A DNA stretch of 64,000 bases from Thecamonas trahens ATCC 50062 (taxonomy: Eukaryota > Protista > Apusomonadida), in assembly GCF_000142905.1 (NCBI RefSeq), contig NW_013657669.1:186001-250000 (forward strand). Direction: 5' to 3'. The position numbers and the translations under genes are program-made. Positions within the stretch are counted from its first letter, which is position 1. Each line of letters opens with the position of its first letter. Shown here one piece after another: positions 2,245 through 64,000 of the stretch. The notes beneath the pieces were generated by a model that worked only from the letters and a program-made list of their open reading frames with translations, was not told the origin of the DNA and made no database searches.

Positions 2245-5200
2245 TTATGATTCGGCGTCAGCGTCGGCGTCGGCGTCGGCGTCAGCGTCGGCCTCGTTCT
2301 CAGCCTCTACATCAGCCTCTCCATCCGCATCTTCAGCAGGTTCGTCCTCATCCTCCTCGGCCTCGTCCGCCTCCTCTGCTTCTGCCTCTGCCTCGACCTC
2401 TGCCTCGACCTCAGCCTCGACCTCAGCCTCGACCTCAGCCTCGGCCTCAGCCTCATCCCGATCCTCGGCCTCGTCTCCATCTTCATCCTCGCCATCGCCA
2501 TCCTCAACCGCATCCTCGACCTCGGTCTCGACTTCGGCCTCGGCCTCGGCATCAGCCACGGGCTCCTCCACCACGTCCATGTCGTTGGTGTCGTCAGCGA
2601 CGGGCTCGGCCTCCGGCTCGGGCTTGCGACCAAACGCAGGCTTGACTCCGCTGCTAAAGCCGACCGGCGAAAAGCCAAAGGTCTTGCGAGCGCCGCCGCC
2701 GACGGCGCCGCCAACACCGGCGCCAAAGTTAAACTTGGGCGTGGACGAGCCCGAGCTTCCGCCAAACGGCCGGGTGATCTTGGGCGCGGTGCCCGGGAGC
2801 GCAGGCGGCGGCGGAATCTTGGACTTGGACTTTGGCTTGGGCGGCGCGGCGGGAGCCTCGTCCATCGGCTCGGGCACCGGCATCGGGGTGTCGATGCTCT
2901 GGGCCGGGACTGGCGTGGTCGCAGCCGGGGCAACGTCCATGGCGGCCTCACCGGCCAGCTTGGCCAGGAGCAGGTTGACCTTGCGCTCGAGGTTGACGGC
3001 CTTCTGCTCGGCGGCGGCCTTCTCGGTGAGCGCGGTCTTGCGGGCGGCCTTGAGCTTCTGCATCTTCTCCATGATGCTCTTGGCACGCTCCTCAAGTGCC
3101 TTGCCGCGGGTCTCGGCCTTGGTCAGGGCCGTCTTCGCCTCGGCAAGCTCGACCTCGGCCTTCTCTGCGCGGGCCTTGGCCTTGGCCATCTGCGCCTGCA
3201 GGTCGGCCACCGACGCGTCGCGCTTCTGGAGCTCGATCTTGGACTGGGCATCAGCGGTGGCCCTGCTCCCAGCGGCAGCCATCTCTTCCTTGAGCTTTTT
3301 GATGGTCTCCGCGTGCTCGCGCGCCTTGGTCCGCCACGACTGCCCGGCCTTGATCAGCTTGCCGCTCTTGGTCTTGAGCTCCGCCTCCGACTTGGCCAGC
3401 TTGGTCACCTCGGCAGACCGCTCCGAGAGCGCTGCACGGAGCTCGGCGAGTTGCTTGCTCGCGATGGCGAGCTCCTTGTCCTTGGCTGCCAACTGGGCCT
3501 TGGCGCCCTTGGCCGCCTCCACCAGCCGGGCGTGCTCCTCGGGGTCAACCCGCTTGTACTTGATCATCAGCTTCTCGACGCGAGTCTTCCACATACCGAT
3601 CTCAACCTTGAGCGAGTCGCGCTCGGCGAGCGCTGCGTCGCGCGACGCTGCCAGCTCCGCCTTCTCCTTCAGCAGCGGCGTCAGCTGCTCCTCAAACGAC
3701 CGGGCGCGCTCCTCCCACTCGCGGAGCCGCTCCATGTTGCGGCGCGACTCGTCGCGGAGCATCATGTTCGATTCCTCGTAGAGCGCAACCTTGGCGACCT
3801 TGTCCATCAGCTCCTTCTGCTCAGCCACTGTCCGTCCGCCGTACAGCGCCAGCGACGACGTCATGCCGCCTTCATCACCGTACGCCGCCTCGGCGCTGGC
3901 CCGCGCACGCTCCGTCTCCAGCGTACGCTGCAGGTGCTCGGCCTTTTGCCGCAGCCGCGAGGACTCCTGCGACGAGAGCTCGAGCTTGGCCCCGAGCACC
4001 TCCTTTTCGCGCTGGAGGAAGCGGACAACCTCGCGGAGCTCGGCCAGCGACTTGTCTCTGTCCTCCGCGCTCTCGCCGGCACCCTGGCCGCCGGCCGCCG
4101 GCGAGCCAAAGGTGGCGGCCGCCGCGCCGGGCCGCAGCGGCGAGCCAGCGAGGGTGGGCGCGCGTGCGTCGGCTGCTGCACCTGCGGCCTTGCCCACGCT
4201 CAGCGCCTGCGCCGTCACCGTCTCCAGTTGCGAGTGCAGGAATTCGTTCTGCTTCTCGACTTCGGCCACGCGCTCGGCCGTCGCCGCCACGCTCGCCTCG
4301 CTCTCTTTGCGGAGAGCCTCCAGCTCGGCGCGTGCCGCGCTCGCCTTGGCTTCCGCGGTGTGTGCGTCTTCGCGCGCCTTGCGCGCCTCGGCTTCCTTCT
4401 CCGCCAGCTCGCTGCGGAGGGCGGCGAGTGCCTCGAGATCCTTGGCGTGCGCCACAATCTCCTTCTCGTACTTGTCCTGGTTCTGGGTCGCCAGCGACTT
4501 GGCGAGCGCGACGCGGGCGTCGACTCGGTCTGCCGCATCACGCAGGCCCTCCATCTCGGCGAGGAGCGCTGCTTCACGCTCGTCGGCCGCTGCCTTGGCC
4601 CGCGCCAGCACCGCGTCGGCGGTGTTAACCTTTTGCTGTAGCGCAAGCAGCTCGGACGTGGCCTCCTGCAACTGGGCACCCTGCTCGGACACGGCTTTGC
4701 GCGCGTCGGCCAGCTCGGTCCGCAGGCGGGTGAGCTCGGCATCAGTGGTGGCCTTGTACTCGTCCGACGTGCGTGCCAGCTCGGCGTGCGCCTTCTCGGC
4801 CTCGGCGGCAATGGCCTTGAACTGCGCCACGTGCTGCTTCTCGCGCACCAACTGGCGCTGGAGCTCGAGCGCCTGCTCGCGGAAGGCATCGCCCGACGGC
4901 AGGCTGCCTGCAGCCTCGCTACCGCTTGTGGACTCGCCGCCGGCACCGGCAACTTCCATATCCTGCACCGCGCCCTGCGAGAGGTTGGCGGCAAGGCCGG
5001 GGTTGGCCAGCGCCACCTTGAGCTCAGCGCGGGCCTGCGACGCCTCGTCGCGGGCAGCAAGGAGGGCGGTCGCCTTCTCGTCGAGCTGGCGCTGGAGCGC
5101 GGCAATCTTGCCCTCGGCAATGGTGGCGGCCTGCGACGACCGCTCGCGCAGCGCATCGAGCTGGTTTTGCAGGAGCTTGGCCTCGGCCCGGGCCGACGCC

Positions 5201-54226: not shown

Positions 54227-55716
54227 GCGTCCAGATCGGCCCCAACATGCGTCAGTTCCTCGGCGTGCCGTTTGCCGTCCCGCCGCTCGGCGAGCTCCGG
54301 TTCCGCAAGCCGGTGCCTGCCAAGCCGTGGACCGGCGTGCTGTCGACCAAGCTCAACGGGCCGGCGTGCCCGCAGCCGTCGACGGGACTGGACCAGTTTG
54401 CCAACGTCTCGGAGGACTGCCTCTACCTCGATGTGTATGCCCCCGTTGAGACGCCGTCGACGCCGCTGCCGGTCGTGGTCTACTTTTACGGCGGCTCGTG
54501 GGAGTACGGCGACATCGGCGGCCTCACCGGCGACGGTATCTACAACGGCATCTACTGGAACAACGCGTTCCCAAACAAGGCCATCATCGTGACCACCAAC
54601 TACCGGCTCGGGCCGTTTGGCTGGCTCGCCTCGCCGCTGCTCGCCAAGGAGGACCCGGACGGCTCAACGGGCAACACTGGGCTGCAGGACCAGCGCCTGG
54701 CGCTCATGTGGGTCCAGAAGAACATCGCGGCCTTTGGCGGCGACCCCAACAAGGTGACCATCTGGGGCGAGTCGGCTGGCGCCGGCTCGGTCTCCACCCA
54801 CCTGGTCTCGCCCAAGTCGTGGCCGTACTTCCACGCCGCCATCATGAACTCGGGCCCGCCGGCCAACTGGACCGCCCGCTCACTCGACATGGCCGAGGCC
54901 CACTGGGACCGCGTCGTCACCGCCGTCGGCTGCTCCGCCGGCGACGTGCTCGCCTGCATGCGCGCCCAGCCGATGGAGACCCTCGTCAAGCACATGGAGA
55001 ATTTGCCCGGCGAGCTCGTCTCGTTCACCCCGGTCGTTGACGGCGTCCAGCTTCTCGACATTCCGCCGCAGCTTGTCCGCAACGGTTCCTTCCACAACGT
55101 GCCCGTCATGCTTGGCTCGAACCTCGATGAGGGCACACTCTTTGTCCCGCTCAAGCCGTCATCGTCGACCGCCGACCTTGTCAAGTGGGCCAACTTTCAG
55201 TTTGGCGCAGAGACCGCCTCCCGCGTTCTTGCCGCCTACCCCGAGTCCGACTACAGCTCGGCCTTTGTCCGCGCCTCTGCCCTCTTTGGCGACGCCGCCA
55301 TGACCTGCCCGGTCCGCCGCGCCGCCCGCTGGATCACCGGCCACGGCGGCACCACTCACACCTACTTTTTCACGCACACCTGGCTCCTTATTCAGCTCTT
55401 TGACCCATCCATCGGCGTCTGCCACGGCTCAGATCTCGTCGGTGCCTGGGACGTCGTCGTCGCCGCCATCGGCCCCGGCGAGGAGAAGCTCGCCAACCAG
55501 ATGGCCTCGTACTGGTCCAACATGGTCGCCAGCCACAACCCGAACTCGCCCACCACTGTCCCCGTCGCATGGCCGGCTTACAACGCCTCATCTGACACCA
55601 ACATCGAGTTCAACATCCCAGTCTCCACTCAGACCGGCCTCCACTCGGCCCACTGCGACTTCTGGGACACTATCTACGCCGAGGAGCACCCGCCGCTCTC
55701 GCCGTTCTCGCTCTAA
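54227..55716 (+). CDS. Type-B carboxylesterase (cholinesterase-like); upstream exon probably in the gap
   Basis: FLGVPFAVPPLGELRF, SEDCLYL, NYRLG, GESAG (Ser), NLDEG (Glu) and CHGSD (His). Acceptor CACAG at 54226. Confidence 0.93.
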
Positions 55717-55733: not shown

Positions 55734-56783
55734 TCACCGCCCACCCATTGCACTCGCCACCAGCCTTGACGCCGCGTCGAGCTGGTCTAGCAGTCCCTCC
55801 AGCAGCGCATCGGCGTCGGCTGGCGTAGGCGCGTCAGCGGCCCGTGCGAGGACAGACTGTGAGATGGCTGCCAGATACTTGGAAAACAGCGGCGAGCCCG
55901 CAAGTAGCGCCAGCTTGGTCCGGAGCGCAGCGGCCTCACGCTGCGCCTCGCGCCGCGACGCCCGCAGCGACGCAATGAGCTCCTTGTCGCGCGCCCGCGC
56001 CGCGGCCTCGCGATCAAGCAGGAACGCAAGGTGCTGCGGCGATGAGACGTCAGCCTGGCGACTGGCAGGCGACACTCCGTTCGCGCTTGCCGAACTGACT
56101 GGGGTGGCAGAATTTCCGGCTGGAGGCGGGACGGCGGTGAGAAAGACAGTCCCGGCGTCGTCGGTGGCATTCCCAGCATCAGCGCCAGCGCGATCACCAT
56201 CGCTTCCCGCCTTGGCTCGATTCGCCGCGAGCCGAGCCCGAATGGCTGCAGCCCGCGGTGACGCTGCTGCTGGCCTACCTTCGGCCGTCTTACCAGCTCT
56301 ACGAGCCCGACTCCTACCTCCCGCCCGGCCCGGCGTCCTGCCCGAGTTGGCGAGTGTGTTGTAGGCCTTGCGGGTGGCATCGAGCTTCCGCTCCAGCCTC
56401 TCCACCATTGCCGCCGTCACCGCAATTTTCTTTGCCTGTGCTTTGACTTCAGCCTGTGCCTGTGCCCGCGCCGCAGCCTCCCGCCGCGCCATGGCTGCCG
56501 TCTCGGCCAGCTCCGAGGCCACCGCCGGCGGCACCGTCGACTCTGCTGCCGCCAGCGACTTCTCCAGTTCGGTAATGCGTGCAAGCAGCCGGACGTTGGT
56601 GGCCAGCGCCGAGCGTTTGGCATGCCGCTCCTGATCGAGACGCGCAGAGAGCGTCCGCGCAGCCGTCGCCAGTGACTCGGCTGATGGCGGCGATGGCGGT
56701 CGAGGCGGCGGTGGCGGTCCGAGTGAACGAGATGTTGCCTGCGACGACGACCGCGGTGGTGTGGGTTGGAGCTCTGAGCTCAT
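55734..56783 (-). CDS. Hypothetical coiled-coil protein
   Basis: ATG 56783 opens a 349-aa frame with heptad-like segments and abuts the esterase stop. No family recognised. Confidence 0.55.
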   Translation of the reverse strand: MSSELQPTPPRSSSQATSRSLGPPPPPRPPSPPSAESLATAARTLSARLDQERHAKRSALATNVRLLARITELEKSLAAAESTVPPAVASELAETAAMARREAAARAQAQAEVKAQAKKIAVTAAMVERLERKLDATRKAYNTLANSGRTPGRAGGRSRARRAGKTAEGRPAAASPRAAAIRARLAANRAKAGSDGDRAGADAGNATDDAGTVFLTAVPPPAGNSATPVSSASANGVSPASRQADVSSPQHLAFLLDREAAARARDKELIASLRASRREAQREAAALRTKLALLAGSPLFSKYLAAISQSVLARAADAPTPADADALLEGLLDQLDAASRLVASAMGGR

Positions 56784-57132
56784 GGTGGTGCGTATGGTGC
56801 GGGGGAGAGCAAGAGAGAAAGGGAGAGACTGTGTATGCGTATGTGTGTTGTTGTGTGTGCGTGGGGTGTATGGAGGTTGGTGGGGGTAGGGCGGTGTGGG
56901 GAATGGCAGCAGCAGTGGCAGCGGTGGTGGCGGTTGGTGGCATGGGGCGACTCGAAAACTGGTCCTGCACACAAGCTGCAGATCACATCACAAGCTCGCC
57001 TCTTAACCTCACATCCACATGCATGGACCACATGGCTTGTTGTGCAAAGATGTTGTTTCAAAGACTTGAGGGGATAAAACGGAGAGGAAGGGGGGAGAGG
57101 GGGGGGGGGGGGGGGGGGGATTGGGGCGTCCC

Positions 57133-60100
57133 TTACTTCTTCTTGCCCTTGCGCTTGGCCGTGGCCTCCATGAGGGTACCGACGAGCATAAGGAGCATCT
57201 TCGGGTCGACCGAAGTGATGTGCTCGGGGACGAGGTAGTGCGAGGCTCCGAGGCGACGGGCCGAGCCCAGGACGAGCTTGGCGTTGGCCTCCTTCTCTTC
57301 CGGGGTGAGGCCGGGCTCGACCATCGAGTAGTCGATAGCGCGCGGGTTGCAGGCGGCGAGAAGGTCGATGAGGAAGAGACCCGAGGAGAGCGAGCGGTCC
57401 TTGAACGACTTGACGTCGACGGGCTTGCCCGACGCGCGGACCTTGGAGACGGCCCACTGCCAGACGTCCTGCTCCGAGACGGCGCGCCCACCGTACGAGA
57501 GCGACGAGATGGAGCGAAGGAGGTCGTATCGGAGGAGCTGCCAGATAACCGCCATGGTGAGCTTCTGCGAGCCGTCGACGAGGTCCTTACCGTCGATGCC
57601 GACAAGGACAAGGCCGAGGTCGCGGCCCAGAGTCACAGCGAGGTTCGCGTTCTCGACCTTGCGGACCACGTGGAGTGACTTGCCGTCCTTGGCCCGGTTG
57701 ACGCGGTCCCAGGTGACAATGCCCGGCTCGACCTTGTCCTCGAGCTCAAGCATCTTGATGCCATCCATAAAGTCGCGCTTGAGGTCGTGGACATCCTCCA
57801 CGCCCTTGGCACCAATCCACGCCAGGTATGCCCGCTCCTCGGCGGTGCCCTGCAGCTCGGCCTCGTCAAAGTCGCCGAGGGCAAGCTCCATCTCCTCGGT
57901 GAGGGTGAGCCCAGTGCGGGCCGAGAAGAGCGACGCCACAAAGAAGAGCAGCAGCCGGACGTTGCCACCGGCCACGTCGGCGGGGGTGACCCACGAAAAG
58001 TTGCCGACAATGCCAGACGCGGCCTGGAGGAGAACGCCGGCGCGCGCCTCCGGATCGCCCTGTGCCAGCGCGCCGAGCCCGGTGCTCGGCTCGAGCGCGT
58101 TGAGCAGGTGGACGAGCGCCACGCCGTCCGCGAGGTCGGCAAACGAGTCAATGGCCGGCGCGCCGCGCGCCACCGCGTGGTGGTTGACCCAGCGGACAAG
58201 GACGACCTCGGGCGGGAGGCGAGAAAACGCCGCAACCTCCTCGTCGCTGGCCTGAAGCTCAAACAGCTCCGGGTGGCGGACAACGTTGACGACGGCAAGC
58301 AGACCGGCACGGGTGATGTCCCACAGGAGCGAGAGAATCTGCGGGACCTTGCCGGTGTAGAGCGCCTTGGGTGTGACGTTGAGCGCCGGGCAGCCAATGG
58401 CGCGGGCAGTGTTGATGACCAGGCTTTGGTTCATCAGCACGTCGTCCTCGTCCGAGATGTTGAAGTTGATGACACGCTCGTCGACCGAGCCCGGCATCAT
58501 TGCGTTGAGGTACTTGCAGAGGAGGACGCCATCGGCAGCGGCAGTGGCCACCGACACCGCCCGCGGGTTCATCGGAAGCAGCGACGCCACGTGCGGGTCC
58601 GACGCCAGCGTCGAGTTGATAAACTCGATGAGCTTGGCGTCTGCGCCCTCGAGCGCAAAGTCGGCCTGCTCGGCCAGCTTCTTCTTGAACGCCATCTTCT
58701 CGGCCTCGAGCTTTGCCTGCATCTCGGCGAGCTGCGCCTTGAGCTCGGGCGCGAGCTCCTCGAGCTTGGCCCGCGCCGCCCGCTCGTCGGCAAGCTCCTG
58801 CTTGAGCCGTGCCACCTCGTCGAGCGCATCGTCGCGCTCGGCAGTCATCTCGTTGAGCTTCTCGTGCGAGAGACCCTCCTTCTCGGCGAGCTGAGCGCGG
58901 AGCGCGGCGAGCTCGGCCTCGAGCTCGGCCACGCGCTCCTTGAGCGTCGCAATCTCGTGCTGGTAGCCCTCGATCTGCTGGCGAGTCTCGCCCTGCGCCT
59001 TCTCCTCCAGCGCGCGCCGCTCGGCCTCGGCCGCCGCAAACTTTGACTTGGACTCGGCGAGCTTGCCGTTGAGCGACTCGATCTCTGACATGAGCGCCTG
59101 GACCTGGGCAGAGCCCTCGGCTGACGACGCCTCCGCCGAGTCGAGCACCTTACGCATCTGCGCAATCTCGGCGTTCTTTGACTGCGTCGCCTCGAGGAGC
59201 GAGGTAAAGTCGTCGAGTCCGCGTGCGTCGTCGCCCATCAGCGCCGACATCAGCGCCCGGAGCTGGACATCGGCGAGCGAGGTCGTCTGCTCGAGCGCCA
59301 GCGCCGCGTCGGCGTCTCCGCGGTCGGCGTTGACCGCCTGTGCGGCGACCACAGACGCGGCTGCCAGGCGCGTGACAGCCTTGGCCGCCTGCGACGCATT
59401 GACTCGCCGCGCAGAGCCCTCGGGCAGCTTCTCGACCGCGGCCATCAGCGCGTCCGCAAACTGCGGGTACGCGCGCGTAACCTTGTACGCCGCGTCGTCG
59501 AGCTCGGCGCCCGACCCACCGGTCGAGGCGAGCTTGAGACCCTGAAGTGCCGAGGCAAGCGCGACAGCGCGCGGGCCGAGTGCGTCCGACGCGTCTTCGT
59601 CGAGCGGCGGCGAGCTCCCGTCCGCTGCCATCGGCTCAACCGCATTGGCCGATGCAACTGCGGCGGCGGCAGCGACCACAACCGGCGACGGCGCCGGCGG
59701 CACCTTGGGCTTGGTCTTGCGGGCAGGGACCGGCGGCCGGCCGCCCACCCGCACCCGCCGCTTCTTGCGTTGCGTCGTCGTTGTCGGCTTGGCCGGGATC
59801 GGGGGCGGCGCCGGCATCGGCGGCTGCTCCCACGTTGTCGCCCCCGTCTCCGAGCTGACGTAGTAGTAACGACCGTGCGAGTCGTCGTAGAACGCCTCCC
59901 AGGGCGCAGGCACCACCTTGGGGTCCGGCGCCACCTGCGGCTTGGCTGGGATCGGCGGCTTGGCCGGAAGCATCACCGTCACCTCGTAGAACTCGTACTC
60001 GTACTCGGGGCCAGTCGGCACAGCCGGAGCCGGCGCGTCGGGCTCATCAGCATCGGCGTCCGACGCAAGTGCTGCTGCGTCTGCGGCGGCCTTGGCCGTC

Positions 60101-63100
60101 GCCGCGGCAGCGGCGGCAGATGCAGTTGCATCACCGGGCAGCGGGACAGCGAGCACCGGCTTGCCGGCCTTCTGGATGTGTGCCAGCGCTTCGGCGCAGC
60201 CGCGCGAGCCCGGGAGCGAGCCCCGGAGCTCGGCGGCGGCGTCGAGAGCGGCGTCGTGGACTGCGGCGGCGTCGTCGGGCGTTGGCCCGTCATAGCGGTT
60301 GAGGGCAGCAATGCCGGCTTCCTGGGTGAGCTCGACCTCGGCAATGAGCGCCGAGACGAGGCCGGCGGCAGCGTCGAGCGTCGCACGCGTCCGTCCGCCC
60401 TTGGTCTCGCCGACAGCGAGCAGGTCGAGGATGGCAGCAATGGTCCGCGAGGCGACGGCGGCGAGGCCCGAGGCGGCAGCGGCCGGCGACTCGGCCGAGA
60501 GCAGCTGGAGCGTGGCCGAGAGCGCCGCCGAGGCAGCGACGGTCGAGTCGATACCGTCAGAGGCCGAGCGGCGGGCGACGGTCTCGCGCGAGGCGCGCGT
60601 GTCGGCGTCAAGCGCATCTTCCTTGGCACCAAAGGTACCGGCCGAGAGCGCCGAGATGCCGGCTGCGACCGACGACGCGCTGTCCTGGAGGGTTTTGAGA
60701 GCGGCTGAGACGTCGTAGAGCCAGTTGGCGGCCTTGGCGGCGTTAAAGGCCTTGACAAGGGCGGTGACCCGCTCGTCAGACTCGGCCTTGGCCTTGGAGA
60801 GCAGATACTCCTCACCCGGGTTGTGGAAGCCGGCAGCGGTGAGGGTACCAATGGCGAGGTTTGTCTCGGCGTAGGCCGGGAGAGCGGCGGCGACCGCGTC
60901 GAGCAGAGCCGTCTGCGACTCGCGGCCATGCGGCTCAGCCTCGTAGTAGAGAGCCGAGTCGCCCAGTGCCGCGTTTGGCTTGGCCATGCCCGACGCCGCA
61001 CGCTTGGCAGTCCGCAGCGCGTCGGTGTCGATGGCCGAGTCAACGGTGACGAGGACGGTCCGGGTGTTCGACGCCGCAAGCGTGGCAGCCTTGGCCTCTG
61101 TGGCGAGGATGAGCAGGGCCTGGCGCGAGGCGCGGAGCGCGTTGAGCGCGTCCGACTTGGCGCCCACCGCCAAGGCGGCGGCAGTGACGGCGGCAAGGTC
61201 GGCGTCAGAGCGGGTCTCCTCAAACTTGGTGATGGCAGCCTGGAGCGCGCCGAGCGAGTCCGAGAGCGCTGCCGACGAGGCGACCAGCTCGGCCTTGACG
61301 AGGTCGTTTGACTCAGCCTCGGCCTCGCGCTGCGCGAGCGGCAGGAGGGCGGCGGCCGAGTCGGCAACGCCACGGGCGGCAAGGATCTTGGCCTTGCGCG
61401 AGTCCTTGGCGAGGGACTCGAGGCCCGAGCCAAGGGTCCCGGCGGCGGCGTCGAGGGCGGCCGGCTCCATCTCGGCGGTGAGCGAGGCAAGCGAGGTGGC
61501 GAGCGACGAAGCAGTCGACATGAGCGAGGCGAGGGCGGCGGCATCGACGCCCGGGACGGCGGCGAGGGTGGCGAGCGAAAACGGCGCGGTCGGGTCCGAA
61601 CCCGTGAGCGGAGCAAGCGAGCCGGCAAGCGCGGCGGTGGCAGCAGCCGTCGCCTCGTCGTTCTCGGCGTCGTCGAGCGCGTCTAGGGCAGCGGTGGTGG
61701 CGGCGGCGGCGCGGTCGGCTGCGACCAGAGTCGAGAGCGCAAGAACTGGGCGGACCGGCGGCGGCGGGTCCGAGTCGGTGGCGGCGCGGAGGGCACCGAG
61801 TGCGTCCGAGACCTGGCCTGCGAGCCGAAGCAGCTCCTGCATGTCGACGGGCGAGACGCCATCGATCGAAGCCGCGGTGACAAGCGAAGAGAGCGCGTCG
61901 TCGAGAACAAGGCCCTGGAGTCGAAGCTTGGCAATGCCCGAGGCGTCCGACGCGGTGGCGAGAGCCGAGAGCGCGACAGTGTGACGACCGTAGTCGACAA
62001 CGGCGGAGCGAGCGTCGTCGATGGGCTTGGAGAGCGCCGGGTCGGCGGTGGTCAGCGGCGCGCCAATGAGCGAGTCGAGGGCCGAGTTGAGGTCCGAGGC
62101 GGCAGCTAGGAGCGAGGCAAGGTCGACACCCGGAATGGGCTTGGTCGATGAGAGTGTCTGCAGGGCGACAGAGAGGTCGCCAGCAGCCTTGAGCAGCTGA
62201 TCGAGTGAGGCGCCGGCGTTGCCCTTGGCCACGTCTTTGGCGGCGAGGTCGGCAGCCTGAAGGAGGGCGACGAGCGAGGCGGTGACGCCGTCGGCGAGCT
62301 CGTCGAGACCGGCGTCGGCCATGGAGCGGGATGCAAGGACCGAGCGAAGGTCATCGGCAAGGGCAACAAGCTGCTCGGACGACTCGAGAAGGTCGTACTT
62401 CTTAAGACGGTCGGCCGAGGTGACGCCGGCGGCGGAGACAACGTCACCCGAGACGCTTGACATCTCGGCGAGGATTGAGTCGAGCATGTCGCGGGTGGAC
62501 TGAAGGTTGATGGCACGCTCGCGCGCGGTCTCGCCCATGTTCTCATCGCCGGCGTACGGCTCGACTGGGCGGTCTGCGGACTGGAGAGCCTTGACCGAGA
62601 GCTTGAGCGCCTTGTCGAGCTTCCGGACCGAGACAGCGGACGAGCCGCGGGCGGCAGAGAGGCGGTTGGCACCGACAGACCCGACGCCGAGGACCGAAGA
62701 CGAGTCCATGCGGTGGAAGACGCCCGAGGTGGTCTTGGTGATGGCGTGGGCGTTGGACGGCGCAATAGTCTCCTCCATAATGATGGTCTGCTGGTCGTCC
62801 TCAATCTCCTTCTCACGGTCGCGGCGCTGCGAGAGAATGAGGTCGATGTACCCGGAGATGAGGGCGGCAATGGCGCGGCCCTCCTCGGTGAGAACGGTGT
62901 AGTACTCCTGGTCGTGGTCACCAAAGTCAAGCGTGAGTGAGGTGTCGGACGGGGCCCAGCGGCGGAGCTGGGTGAGCGCAAACGGCTTCGAGAGCGACTT
63001 CTTCTCGATGGGGTCGAACCGGTACAGGTGCGACTTGGAGACACCGAGAATGACCGGCTGGAACTTCTTGGTCAGCTTGTTGGTCTTCTTGGAGCGGATC

Positions 63101-64000
63101 GGCTCCTGAACGTGATAAGTGGAGATGCCAAAGGTCTCGAGCGAGCGGATGAGCTGGACAAAGCGGAACTTGGCGGCATCGGCCTTGGTCCCGCGGATCT
63201 TGGCATGGGCGGCGAGGACCTCCTTAAACGTCTTCTTGCCCTCCTTGCGGTACTCCTCGGGGAGCCACTGGCCAAAGTCGATCTTCTTAACCGTATGCTT
63301 GCCCGGGGCGTGGTCGCCGAGCGTGACCTGGGCCGAGAGCGCGGCAAGGAGAATGGCCTCATCACGGGCAACCGGCAGGTTGCCGTTGGCAACGTCGTCC
63401 TGGTACTGGTTGAAGAGGAGCGAGAGCGTGAGCGGGTCCGAGGTATCGACCGAAGCGTCCGAGAAGAAGAACTTTTTCTTGAGCAGGACCGAGTACTCGG
63501 GCAGGACGCCGCACTGGGCAAGCGTCTGGTCGGCCGAAAGCCAGTCCTCGTCGATGCCCTTCTTGCTCACAATCTTGGTGCCCGAGAACGAGGTGTCCAG
63601 GCCGGCCTTGGCGCGGATCTTGGCCACCTCCTTCTGCCGCTTGGCCTCGGCCTCCTTCTGCTCCTCGGTGAGCGAGACCTGGAAGGCAAACTCGGCCGGG
63701 TTGGCAATGCCGTTCTTCTCGCACACCAGCGCCACGAGGTCCTTGGTCGGCGCCGACATGTCGATCATGACCGTCTTGATAGAGCCGTCCATGAGCTCGA
63801 CACGCAGCGGGCGCATCTTGGACTTGTACGTCAGCTCGTCGAGGTTGACAATGTCGTAGAAGCGGAGCGTCTGCTCGCGCTTGAGAAAGTACGAGTCCTC
63901 GAGCACGCCGCCGCCGTCGTTCCACAAAGCAAACTGCGGCGAGTCGTCCATGCGGAAGGCCTCCGCCACTTGCTTGCACACATCGTCCACATACATGGCG
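57133..64000 (-). CDS. Talin-like FERM head and helical rod + WW + coiled coil + fimbrin/plastin 4-CH actin-bundling core (5' end outside window)
   Basis: Talin head: KMRPLRVELMDGSIKTVMID, KKKFFFSD..VDTSDP..L.LLF.Q, RRWAPS..LTLDFGD, ISGYIDLIL. WW: PAPWEAFYD..GRYYYV..ETGATTWEQP. Fimbrin: FINSTL..DP..LPMNP, DGVLLCK..DERVIN, LPPEVVLVRWVN, EERAYLAW, LVGIDGKDLVDG, YHLVPEHI..V.PKM. Confidence 0.88.
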   Translation of the reverse strand, partial: AMYVDDVCKQVAEAFRMDDSPQFALWNDGGGVLEDSYFLKREQTLRFYDIVNLDELTYKSKMRPLRVELMDGSIKTVMIDMSAPTKDLVALVCEKNGIANPAEFAFQVSLTEEQKEAEAKRQKEVAKIRAKAGLDTSFSGTKIVSKKGIDEDWLSADQTLAQCGVLPEYSVLLKKKFFFSDASVDTSDPLTLSLLFNQYQDDVANGNLPVARDEAILLAALSAQVTLGDHAPGKHTVKKIDFGQWLPEEYRKEGKKTFKEVLAAHAKIRGTKADAAKFRFVQLIRSLETFGISTYHVQEPIRSKKTNKLTKKFQPVILGVSKSHLYRFDPIEKKSLSKPFALTQLRRWAPSDTSLTLDFGDHDQEYYTVLTEEGRAIAALISGYIDLILSQRRDREKEIEDDQQTIIMEETIAPSNAHAITKTTSGVFHRMDSSSVLGVGSVGANRLSAARGSSAVSVRKLDKALKLSVKALQSADRPVEPYAGDENMGETARERAINLQSTRDMLDSILAEMSSVSGDVVSAAGVTSADRLKKYDLLESSEQLVALADDLRSVLASRSMADAGLDELADGVTASLVALLQAADLAAKDVAKGNAGASLDQLLKAAGDLSVALQTLSSTKPIPGVDLASLLAAASDLNSALDSLIGAPLTTADPALSKPIDDARSAVVDYGRHTVALSALATASDASGIAKLRLQGLVLDDALSSLVTAASIDGVSPVDMQELLRLAGQVSDALGALRAATDSDPPPPVRPVLALSTLVAADRAAAATTAALDALDDAENDEATAAATAALAGSLAPLTGSDPTAPFSLATLAAVPGVDAAALASLMSTASSLATSLASLTAEMEPAALDAAAGTLGSGLESLAKDSRKAKILAARGVADSAAALLPLAQREAEAESNDLVKAELVASSAALSDSLGALQAAITKFEETRSDADLAAVTAAALAVGAKSDALNALRASRQALLILATEAKAATLAASNTRTVLVTVDSAIDTDALRTAKRAASGMAKPNAALGDSALYYEAEPHGRESQTALLDAVAAALPAYAETNLAIGTLTAAGFHNPGEEYLLSKAKAESDERVTALVKAFNAAKAANWLYDVSAALKTLQDSASSVAAGISALSAGTFGAKEDALDADTRASRETVARRSASDGIDSTVAASAALSATLQLLSAESPAAAASGLAAVASRTIAAILDLLAVGETKGGRTRATLDAAAGLVSALIAEVELTQEAGIAALNRYDGPTPDDAAAVHDAALDAAAELRGSLPGSRGCAEALAHIQKAGKPVLAVPLPGDATASAAAAAATAKAAADAAALASDADADEPDAPAPAVPTGPEYEYEFYEVTVMLPAKPPIPAKPQVAPDPKVVPAPWEAFYDDSHGRYYYVSSETGATTWEQPPMPAPPPIPAKPTTTTQRKKRRVRVGGRPPVPARKTKPKVPPAPSPVVVAAAAAVASANAVEPMAADGSSPPLDEDASDALGPRAVALASALQGLKLASTGGSGAELDDAAYKVTRAYPQFADALMAAVEKLPEGSARRVNASQAAKAVTRLAAASVVAAQAVNADRGDADAALALEQTTSLADVQLRALMSALMGDDARGLDDFTSLLEATQSKNAEIAQMRKVLDSAEASSAEGSAQVQALMSEIESLNGKLAESKSKFAAAEAERRALEEKAQGETRQQIEGYQHEIATLKERVAELEAELAALRAQLAEKEGLSHEKLNEMTAERDDALDEVARLKQELADERAARAKLEELAPELKAQLAEMQAKLEAEKMAFKKKLAEQADFALEGADAKLIEFINSTLASDPHVASLLPMNPRAVSVATAAADGVLLCKYLNAMMPGSVDERVINFNISDEDDVLMNQSLVINTARAIGCPALNVTPKALYTGKVPQILSLLWDITRAGLLAVVNVVRHPELFELQASDEEVAAFSRLPPEVVLVRWVNHHAVARGAPAIDSFADLADGVALVHLLNALEPSTGLGALAQGDPEARAGVLLQAASGIVGNFSWVTPADVAGGNVRLLLFFVASLFSARTGLTLTEEMELALGDFDEAELQGTAEERAYLAWIGAKGVEDVHDLKRDFMDGIKMLELEDKVEPGIVTWDRVNRAKDGKSLHVVRKVENANLAVTLGRDLGLVLVGIDGKDLVDGSQKLTMAVIWQLLRYDLLRSISSLSYGGRAVSEQDVWQWAVSKVRASGKPVDVKSFKDRSLSSGLFLIDLLAACNPRAIDYSMVEPGLTPEEKEANAKLVLGSARRLGASHYLVPEHITSVDPKMLLMLVGTLMEATAKRKGKKK

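What the first reader, a model, noticed from the sequence alone, without database searches (positions are those of the whole stretch)
57133..64000. Talin-fimbrin fusion: an integrin-type FERM head and rod ending in a complete 4-CH actin-bundling core
Seen: one uninterrupted ORF of more than 2287 aa with talin F0-F3 (about 63996-62810), Ala-rich helical bundles, Pro-rich SH3-ligand motifs (PPIPAKP, PPVPARK) flanking a WW domain (about 59910-59820), a coiled coil (about 59210-58660) and both fimbrin ABDs (about 58630-57160). Established: canonical talins end in an I/LWEQ (THATCH) actin-binding domain, and fimbrins carry EF-hands; neither was recognised here. Inference: a membrane or integrin anchor that bundles actin directly, i.e. 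an alternative adhesome architecture relevant to the origin of focal adhesions and filopodia.
Basis: partly seen in the sequence, partly recalled or inferred. Interest (0 to 1): 0.8.

Follow-up and report, generated by a model that had tools for sequence, protein, structure and literature searches.

The report
Talin head fused to fimbrin core
One intron-free gene of the gliding flagellate Thecamonas trahens joins a talin-type membrane/integrin-binding head and half a talin rod, through a WW domain and a dimerising coiled coil, to a complete fimbrin actin-bundling core; it is a real, conserved chimera of two local paralogues, but it is lineage-restricted and not an ancestral adhesion design.

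Summary
The minus-strand ORF 57133-63996 runs 51 codons past the window end and encodes a 2338-aa protein (P0001) of Thecamonas trahens ATCC 50062. In order it has:
- talin F0-F3 head
- talin-type rod, roughly R1 to R6/7
- Pro-rich segments around a WW domain
- one more helical bundle
- about 190 aa of coiled coil
- the full four-CH fimbrin core

There is no I/LWEQ domain and no EF-hand.

It is not an artefact. A colinear orthologue (62-64% identity) lies on four independent marine metagenome contigs, and every segment shows dN/dS of about 0.14-0.6.

Both halves come from apusomonad paralogues. Head and rod group (100/100) with talin-like genes that end in I/LWEQ. Coiled coil and CH core group (100/99) with a 1755-aa "long fimbrin" of the same genome.

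Among the best talin-head and fimbrin-core proteins of very large libraries, only these two sequences combine the domains, and I found no paper describing the combination.

Most likely function: a dimeric membrane/integrin anchor that bundles actin directly and without Ca2+ control. This is inferred, not shown.

I rate it a new variant of a known kind, of moderate interest.

The parts
57133..64000 (-). Single intron-free coding region of the talin-fimbrin chimera. Stop codon at 57133-57135. The first 51 codons lie outside the window; the ATG is at G000:C11:250149 = L001:2650. Product is 2338 aa (P0001).
63823..64000 (-). Talin-type F0 ubiquitin-like domain (aa 41-109), cut by the window edge.
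   Evidence: Pfam PF16511, 37.4 bits on the full protein; 43 bits in the genome scan.
63445..63807 (-). F1 (RA_2, aa 115-162) with a long basic insert, up to aa ~235.
   Evidence: a single alignment with the talin-1 head, residues 14-434.
63115..63444 (-). F2 (FERM_M, aa 236-345). Three of the four basic positions of the talin-1 membrane patch are kept.
62815..63114 (-). F3 IRS-type PTB subdomain (aa 346-445) with the conserved Arg397-Trp398 (talin-1 R358/W359).
62350..62814 (-). Head-rod linker (aa 446-600), predicted to be mostly disordered.
   Evidence: pLDDT below 50; aligned with the paralogues.
60115..62349 (-). Talin-type helical rod (aa ~601-1345), about 25 helices. Homologous to talin-1 residues 595-1240 (R1-R5/6) and colinear with the I/LWEQ-ending paralogues.
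   Evidence: hhalign, probability 100%, 38% identity; E 3e-21
59911..60114 (-). Ala/Asp-rich and Pro-rich segment (aa 1346-1413), including PPIPAKP.
59821..59910 (-). WW domain (aa 1414-1443).
   Evidence: Pfam PF00397, 35.5 bits; three-stranded sheet in the model; PDB WW hits.
59605..59820 (-). Pro-rich and basic linker (aa 1444-1515). PPMPAPPPIP-x-KP is conserved; PPVPARK is not.
59200..59604 (-). Four-helix bundle (aa 1516-1650). Probably the next talin rod bundle after the WW insertion.
   Evidence: pLDDT 75-85; colinear hhalign match to paralogue residues 1174-1378, E 2.8e-4, probability 41%
58636..59199 (-). Coiled coil (aa 1651-1838). Its last ~110 aa are homologous to the coiled coil of the C28 long fimbrin. 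Modelled as a parallel, in-register homodimer.
57895..58635 (-). Fimbrin ABD1 (CH1-CH2, aa 1839-2085).
   Evidence: (1aoa, 1rt8)
57136..57894 (-). Fimbrin ABD2 (CH3-CH4, aa 2086-2338).
   Evidence: (3byh, 1rt8)

Best explanation
This is a real single gene of Thecamonas trahens. It arose in the apusomonad lineage when a talin-like paralogue lost the distal half of its rod and its I/LWEQ (THATCH) tail, and gained the coiled coil and four-CH core of a 'long fimbrin' paralogue. A WW/proline-rich module was inserted into the rod.

Proposed working (inferred):
- The F0-F3 head docks on acidic membrane lipid and on NPxY tails such as that of the organism's integrin beta.
- The shortened rod (about 6-7 helical bundles) is the force-bearing spacer.
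- The WW/Pro-rich module recruits proline-binding or proline-rich partners, or folds back on itself.
- The coiled coil makes a parallel dimer, replacing talin's C-terminal dimerisation helix.
- Each chain ends in a fimbrin core that binds two actin filaments.

The dimer would therefore tie membrane receptors directly to tightly bundled actin, without the EF-hand Ca2+ switch of ordinary fimbrins.
For: Shown:
- One open frame of 2338 codons with an upstream in-frame stop.
- Talin head at E 2e-68 and the whole fimbrin core at E 5e-95. Domain map.
- The rod profile matches talin-1 residues 595-1240 at E 3e-21.
- A colinear full-length orthologue (P0002/P0273/P0274) lies on four independent marine metagenome contigs.
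- dN/dS is 0.14-0.32 in all folded segments on both sides of the junction.
- The head clusters 100/100 with the I/LWEQ-ending talin-like genes C7/P0003 and C50. hhalign aligns aa 52-1345 colinearly with them.
- The CH core is sister (100/99) to the C28 long fimbrin and not to the canonical fimbrin C9. That homology extends about 110 aa into the coiled coil.
- F3 keeps Arg-Trp, and F2 keeps most of the basic patch.
- The integrin beta of the same genome ends in ...NPLYKDAFDQHENPIY....

Homodimer model of aa 1650-1838:
- Score 0.42, best of 3 controls 0.00.
- That mark was reached by 21 of 30 proteins solved as pairs of one chain and by 0 of 23 solved as single chains.
- On eukaryotes it was reached by 17 of 29, but by only 1 of the 7 with no older solved relative.
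- The runs agree in at least 94% of contacts, and partner pLDDT is at least 84.
- Contacts are i-to-i with heptad spacing, i.e. parallel and in register.
Against: - There is no transcript, protein, localisation or binding data.
- The model of the dimer supports binding but does not show it, and coiled coils can score from resemblance to solved ones.
- Integrin binding is inferred from a few conserved positions. The beta1-beta2 loop of F3 carries a 4-6 residue insertion around the talin-1 K324/L325 position.
- Three other talin-head paralogues compete for the same tails.
- The R9 bundle that autoinhibits talin is absent, so regulation is unknown.
- Whether the fimbrin core still bundles actin without its EF-hand headpiece is untested.
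- dS exceeds 1 (saturated), so the dN/dS values are rough.
Confidence: 0.62

Rival explanations
1. Artefact: a misassembly or gene-model read-through that joins a talin-like gene and a fimbrin-like gene which are really separate.
For: There is an N-run about 300 bp upstream of the start codon. No transcript data were available here.
Against: - The same colinear head-rod-WW-coiled-coil-4CH frame occurs on four independently assembled metagenome contigs from a different species.
- There is no stop in 2338 codons.
- The junction modules are the best conserved parts: 72-74% identity, dN/dS 0.14-0.18.
- The N-run lies outside the ORF.
Confidence: 0.03
2. A real chimera whose head no longer serves integrins. 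It would be a general FERM-type membrane-cortex linker (PIP2 or other receptor tails, in the manner of ERM proteins or Dictyostelium talins) that organises bundled actin in pseudopodia or the gliding surface.
For: - The subfamily (C11, C7, C50) sits on a long branch away from canonical talins (branch 1.14).
- Its members lack most Pfam talin-rod families.
- F3 has an inserted loop at the position that contacts the membrane-proximal part of the integrin tail.
- Dictyostelium talins work without classical integrins (PMC12686525).
- A canonical talin is available for the single integrin beta.
Against: - The NPxY-pocket residues Arg-Trp and the surrounding strand are conserved.
- The integrin tail has textbook NPLY and NPIY motifs.
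Confidence: 0.25
3. A regulatory or competitor protein: a truncated talin that occupies receptor tails or recruits WW/proline partners, with the CH core serving localisation rather than bundling.
For: - The WW/Pro-rich module is conserved.
- R9-R13 and THATCH are lost.
Against: - All four CH domains and the coiled coil are under purifying selection over their full length.
- The match covers the entire crosslinking core.
Confidence: 0.08

Closest known systems
Canonical talin (e.g. talin-1, PDB 6r9t; T. trahens talin on G000:C43)
   Same: - F0-F1(loop)-F2-F3 head, E 2e-68.
- Rod homologous to R1-R5/6.
- Conserved F3 Arg-Trp.
- Probably dimeric.
   Different: - The rod stops after about 6-7 bundles.
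- No R9-R13, no I/LWEQ (THATCH), no C-terminal dimerisation helix.
- A WW/Pro-rich insert, a long coiled coil and a four-CH tail take their place.
Talin-like paralogues of apusomonads: AMSG_01954 (P0004, G000:C7), G000:C50 and the metagenome protein P0003
   Same: - Nearest relatives of the head and proximal rod: 100/100 clade.
- 38% identity over about 1140 aligned columns.
   Different: They keep about 1300 more rod residues and end in I/LWEQ.
Talin B of dictyostelids (Cavenderia talinB, P0108) and the T. trahens C43 talin, both with a villin headpiece
   Same: They set the precedent for talins carrying an extra or alternative actin-binding module at the C-terminus (PF02209).
   Different: The headpiece is added after I/LWEQ. 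Here I/LWEQ is replaced, and the new module is a two-site crosslinker.
Fimbrin/plastin (S. pombe Fim1 1rt8, Arabidopsis 1pxy, plastin-3 7r94; T. trahens fimbrin on G000:C9)
   Same: The complete CH1-CH4 core is aligned end to end, at 36-38% identity.
   Different: - No EF-hand headpiece.
- The core sits at the end of a 1838-aa talin-derived arm.
- It does not branch with the canonical fimbrin of the same genome.
T. trahens 'long fimbrin' (G000:C28:167146-172410, 1755 aa: EF-hands, coiled coil, 4 CH)
   Same: - Sister of the CH core, 100/99.
- 43% identity over 589 aligned columns, including about 110 aa of coiled coil.
- It is the likely donor type.
   Different: It has N-terminal EF-hands and no FERM head, talin rod or WW domain.
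Filamin and alpha-actinin (functional analogues; from my own knowledge of the families)
   Same: Dimeric, CH-domain actin crosslinkers that also bind integrin beta tails.
   Different: - Unrelated integrin-binding parts (Ig repeats or spectrin rod).
- One tandem-CH ABD per chain, rather than a four-CH core.
Muranothrix gubernata (ciliate) transcript P0123: F0 + PH + eight CH
   Same: The only other protein found that combines a talin-type F0 with fimbrin cores.
   Different: - No F2/F3, rod, WW domain or coiled coil.
- Two tandem cores.
- The CH part is no closer than ordinary fimbrins (35% identity), so the combination is independent.

Membership tests
Talin | Atypical FERM head with an extra F0 and an F1 insert (F0-F1-F2-F3). 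| tested here: met
   - Pfam F0, RA_2, FERM_M and IRS, all over their cut-offs.
- One alignment to talin-1 residues 14-434, E 2e-68.
- The head nests among talins in the tree.
Talin | F3 PTB pocket for NPxY tails (talin-1 R358/W359 and neighbours). | tested here: met
   R397/W398 and the flanking strand are conserved. The K324/L325 loop carries an insertion, so the membrane-proximal contact is uncertain.
Talin | Rod of 13 helical bundles (R1-R13). | tested here: not met
   - Only the proximal part is present. The profile matches talin-1 residues 595-1240.
- One more bundle follows the WW insert.
- Nothing corresponds to R9-R13.
Talin | C-terminal I/LWEQ (THATCH) actin-binding domain with a dimerisation helix. 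| tested here: not met
   - No PF01608 at E <= 0.1.
- The same model finds seven other genes in this genome, among them all three other talin-type genes (C43, C7, C50).
Fimbrin/plastin | Four CH domains forming two tandem ABDs in one compact core. | tested here: met
   - Four CH stretches.
- aa 1839-2327 align with 1rt8 residues 16-511, E 5e-95.
- Compactness of the core was not modelled.
Fimbrin/plastin | N-terminal EF-hand Ca2+-regulatory headpiece. | tested here: not met
   No EF-hand family at E <= 0.1. Both other fimbrin-core genes of the genome have EF-hands.
Fimbrin/plastin | Binds and bundles F-actin. | not testable with these tools
   Needs co-sedimentation or bundling assays.
WW domain proteins | WW fold with two signature Trp residues. 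Ligand class (PPxY versus PPLP/PPR). | tested here: inconclusive
   The fold is present. The nearest solved WW domains are a mix of NEDD4-type and PRPF40/FBP11-type, so the ligand class is not resolved.

The most novel reading that the evidence does not exclude
Apusomonads evolved a second, non-canonical adhesion coupler. It would be a dimeric talin-derived protein that binds integrin NPxY tails and, instead of holding single filaments through THATCH, crosslinks filaments into bundles through two fimbrin cores. This would show that the actin-binding tail of talins is an exchangeable cassette (I/LWEQ, I/LWEQ plus villin headpiece, or four CH, all in one genome). It would also give a one-protein route from receptor to filopodium-like bundle.
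Probability: 0.35. Interest if true: 0.7.

Novelty: new variant of a known kind. Interest (0 to 1): 0.55.

Why it matters
Talin is the central force-coupling protein of cell-substrate adhesion, and apusomonads are among the closest unicellular relatives of animals and fungi that have a full integrin machinery.

This gene shows that within one small genome the talin family has diversified by swapping its actin-binding tail: THATCH, THATCH plus villin headpiece, or a fimbrin core.

It offers a natural experiment on what the tail contributes, comparing catch-bond filament binding with filament bundling. It also offers a compact natural design that joins receptor binding, a mechanosensitive rod, dimerisation and bundling in one chain.

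It does not bear on the origin of focal adhesions, because it is derived and lineage-restricted.

Tried and rejected
- The genome search with the protein P0004 failed twice. I replaced it with tblastn on fetched loci.
- My first CH-core query was out of frame.
- The scan of JGI metagenome contigs with the full-length alignment found no relative. Only two peptide patterns were used, so this says little.
- P0123 could not be placed on a contig.
- The Foldseek searches of both AlphaFold models gave no match at E <= 0.001. The best neighbours were talin rod bundles, FAT domains, full-length talin and vinculin. The rod model is of low confidence (mean pLDDT 56.6). I use these results only as consistent with the profile result.
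- The WW ligand class could not be assigned.
- Sebe-Pedros et al. 2010 (PMC2890464) is not held.
- The first CH tree omitted the C28 gene because an insertion splits its match. I rebuilt it.
- Rejected: a transcript origin for the orthologue contigs. They are metagenomic DNA with a convergent neighbouring gene and no poly-A, so they do not prove a single mRNA.
- Rejected: the CH core deriving from the canonical fimbrin C9.
- The 412-aa ORF 55734-56972 just downstream has no family hit and may be spurious in this GC-rich DNA.
Full report
**What is there.** The window is G000:C11:186001-250000 of a 28.7-Mb, 131-contig, roughly 64% GC genome. The genome is therefore T. trahens.

The minus-strand ORF 57133..63996 (2287 aa) is still open at the window edge. 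In the genome it continues 51 codons to an ATG that has an in-frame stop 4 codons upstream. The product is 2338 aa, identical to the predicted protein P0001. No intron needs to be invoked.

**Domain map (P0001 numbering).**
- Pfam finds F0 at 41-109, F1/RA_2 at 115-162, F2/FERM_M at 236-345, F3/IRS-PTB at 360-439, WW at 1414-1443 and four CH domains, all over their curated cut-offs. No I/LWEQ or EF-hand family appears even at E 0.1.
- Against solved structures, aa 43-472 align in one piece with the talin-1 head (residues 14-434, E 2e-68). aa 1839-2327 align with the whole fimbrin crosslinking core (1rt8 residues 16-511, E 5e-95; also 1pxy and plastin-3 7r94).
- A profile of the rod (aa 470-1345 with its relatives, alignment A3) matches talin-1 residues 595-1240 at E 3e-21, and the isolated R5 domain at E 1e-6. 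The Ala-rich helices are therefore a genuine talin rod, about R1 to R5/6.
- An AlphaFold model of this part is of low confidence (mean pLDDT 56.6). It shows about 25 helices of 20-30 residues. Its best Foldseek neighbours are full-length talin and vinculin, at weak E-values.
- A model of aa 1400-1840 (mean pLDDT 66) shows a three-stranded WW sheet, a disordered Pro-rich/basic linker, a four-helix bundle at aa 1518-1645 (pLDDT 75-85) and long helices. The nearest folds of the bundle are talin rod domains and FAT domains, again weakly.

**Is it one real gene?** A 2306-2355-aa protein (P0002, P0273, P0274; 62-64% identical) has the same Pfam architecture and aligns colinearly from aa 38 to aa 2332. 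It lies on four independently assembled contigs of marine metagenomes, including Tara Oceans. These are genomic DNA, also without introns.

The same organism also has an orthologue (P0003) of the I/LWEQ-ending paralogue C7. The fusion therefore predates the split of the two species.

Codon-level comparison gives dN/dS of 0.14-0.32 for the head, linker, rod, WW domain, bundle, coiled coil and both ABDs, and 0.6 for the Pro-rich/basic linker. The bundle and coiled coil next to the junction are the best conserved parts, at 72-74% identity. dS exceeds 1, so the ratios are rough. Misassembly, read-through and pseudogene explanations are not tenable.

**Where the parts came from.**
- The genome holds a canonical talin on C43: one 3197-aa open frame with F0, I/LWEQ and a villin headpiece. 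It also holds two talin-like genes (C7, C50) that start with F0 and end in I/LWEQ.
- In a careful ML tree of heads, C11 plus its metagenome orthologue join C7/P0003 and C50 at 100/100. That clade sits next to the canonical apusomonad talin (82/75).
- Profile-profile alignment shows aa 52-1345 colinear with residues 1-1179 of the C7 family (probability 100%, 38% identity). After the WW insert, aa 1515-1700 align with the very next segment of the paralogue, residues 1174-1378 (E 2.8e-4, probability 41%). The score is weak, but the colinearity makes it credible. The WW/Pro-rich module therefore looks like an insertion into the rod, and the break with the talin parent lies near aa 1650-1700.
- The genome has two other fimbrin-core genes: a canonical EF-hand fimbrin (C9) and a 1755-aa "long fimbrin" (C28: several EF-hands, a long coiled coil, four CH domains).
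- The CH core of the chimera is sister to C28 at 100/99, not to C9. The hhalign match (43% identity over 589 columns) runs about 110 aa upstream of CH1 into the coiled coil.
- The gene is thus a chimera of two lineage-specific paralogues. Because every other member of the head clade and all canonical talins end in I/LWEQ, the I/LWEQ tail was the ancestral state and was replaced.

**How rare is it?**
- Among the 120 best long proteins with this head in a 5.8-billion-sequence collection, only P0001 and P0002 carry CH domains. Nearly all of the others carry I/LWEQ.
- Among long proteins found with the CH core, only these two appear.
- An exhaustive HMMER search of 1.84 billion representatives with the CH core listed many long proteins that combine a coiled coil with a fimbrin core. 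None of the top 150 matched the N-terminal 1838 aa, except for a short F0 match in P0123.
- P0123 comes from a transcriptome of the ciliate Muranothrix gubernata. It has F0, PH and eight CH domains, and its CH part is no closer than ordinary fimbrins. It is an independent combination.
- Full-text searches found no paper that describes a talin-fimbrin or FERM-CH fusion. A 2025 paper on talin force coupling across eukaryotes mentions neither CH domains nor fimbrin.
- The sequence itself is already in public protein sets as an unnamed prediction.

**Likely mechanism (inferred).**
- F3 keeps the Arg-Trp pair (R397/W398, equivalent to talin-1 R358/W359) and the surrounding strand. F2 keeps three of the four basic membrane-patch positions. 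The F3 beta1-beta2 loop has a small insertion near the K324/L325 position.
- The organism's single detected integrin beta (C30) has a transmembrane helix followed by ...WGLDANPLYKDAFDQHENPIYAEN..., the classic NPxY and NxxY motifs. Binding to integrin tails or other NPxY tails, and to acidic lipid, is therefore plausible.
- A two-copy model of aa 1650-1838 scored 0.42 against a best control of 0.00. That mark was reached by 21 of 30 proteins solved as pairs of one chain and by 0 of 23 solved as single chains. On eukaryotes it was reached by 17 of 29, but by only 1 of the 7 with no older solved relative. The runs agree in at least 94% of contacts, and partner pLDDT is at least 84. Contacts are residue i to residue i with heptad spacing, i.e. 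a parallel in-register dimer. This supports dimerisation but does not show it.
- A parallel dimer would present two fimbrin cores at one end and two heads at the other. Without EF-hands, the Ca2+ switch known for plastins (my own knowledge) would be missing. Without R9, so would the talin F3-R9 autoinhibition (my own knowledge).
- The WW class is unresolved. The conserved PPMPAPPPIP motif beside it could be an internal or an external ligand.

**Verdict.** It is a derived apusomonad innovation, and it sits beside a canonical talin rather than showing how adhesions began. I rate it a new variant of a known kind, interest 0.55.

Nothing here concerned human DNA, toxins or viruses, and no spliced model had to be joined.

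Noticed in passing
G000:C43:~244.3-253.9 kb (L010, L003): The canonical T. trahens talin is one 3197-aa open frame with F0, several weak I/LWEQ-like matches, a strong C-terminal I/LWEQ and then a villin headpiece. This is the architecture of Dictyostelium talin B.
   Followed up: partly
G000:C28:167146-172410 (L016:3146-8410): A 1755-aa 'long fimbrin' with several EF-hands (aa ~110-270), a very long coiled coil and a four-CH core that carries an Ala/Ser-rich insertion. Many similar long proteins with a coiled coil and a fimbrin core (1.1-2.0 kaa) exist in the 50% library (P0163, P0166, P0171, P0257 and others).
   Followed up: partly
G000:C28:156864-160883 (L015:864-4883): A 1340-aa protein with SH3, two talin-type F0 domains, RasGEF_N and RasGEF. 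Talin F0 modules are reused outside talins in this genome.
   Followed up: no
P0123/P0272 (EukProt, Muranothrix gubernata transcriptome): A ciliate protein with talin-type F0, a PH domain and eight CH domains (two tandem fimbrin cores). It is an independent F0-fimbrin combination.
   Followed up: partly
G000:C8-type list (C45, C60, C15, C12): Seven distinct open frames in this genome carry I/LWEQ domains: 1004, 2481, 2259 and 2616 aa in addition to the three talin-type genes. That is an unusually large I/LWEQ repertoire.
   Followed up: no
L021:3240-6416 (G000:C30:55240-58416): The integrin beta has a long Cys-rich stalk and a cytoplasmic tail with WKRDK, NPLY and NPIY motifs very like animal beta tails.
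   Followed up: partly
window 54247-55716 (+): A carboxylesterase-family gene (PF00135, E 2.5e-104) lies about 1.4 kb downstream of the chimera. The 412-aa ORF between them (55734-56972, minus strand) has no family hit.
   Followed up: partly
L001:~2950-3090 (G000:C11:~250.45-250.6 kb): A run of N (assembly gap or withheld stretch) flanked by GT/CA and CT-rich simple sequence, about 300 bp upstream of the start codon.
   Followed up: no
L007:150-243: In the metagenome orthologue the reading frame upstream of the called ATG still resembles the T. trahens N-terminus (…EVDPTQAGGAEVTIKVT…). The 2306-aa models are therefore probably truncated at the N-terminus, and the 2355-aa model (P0273) is closer to the true start.
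   Followed up: partly
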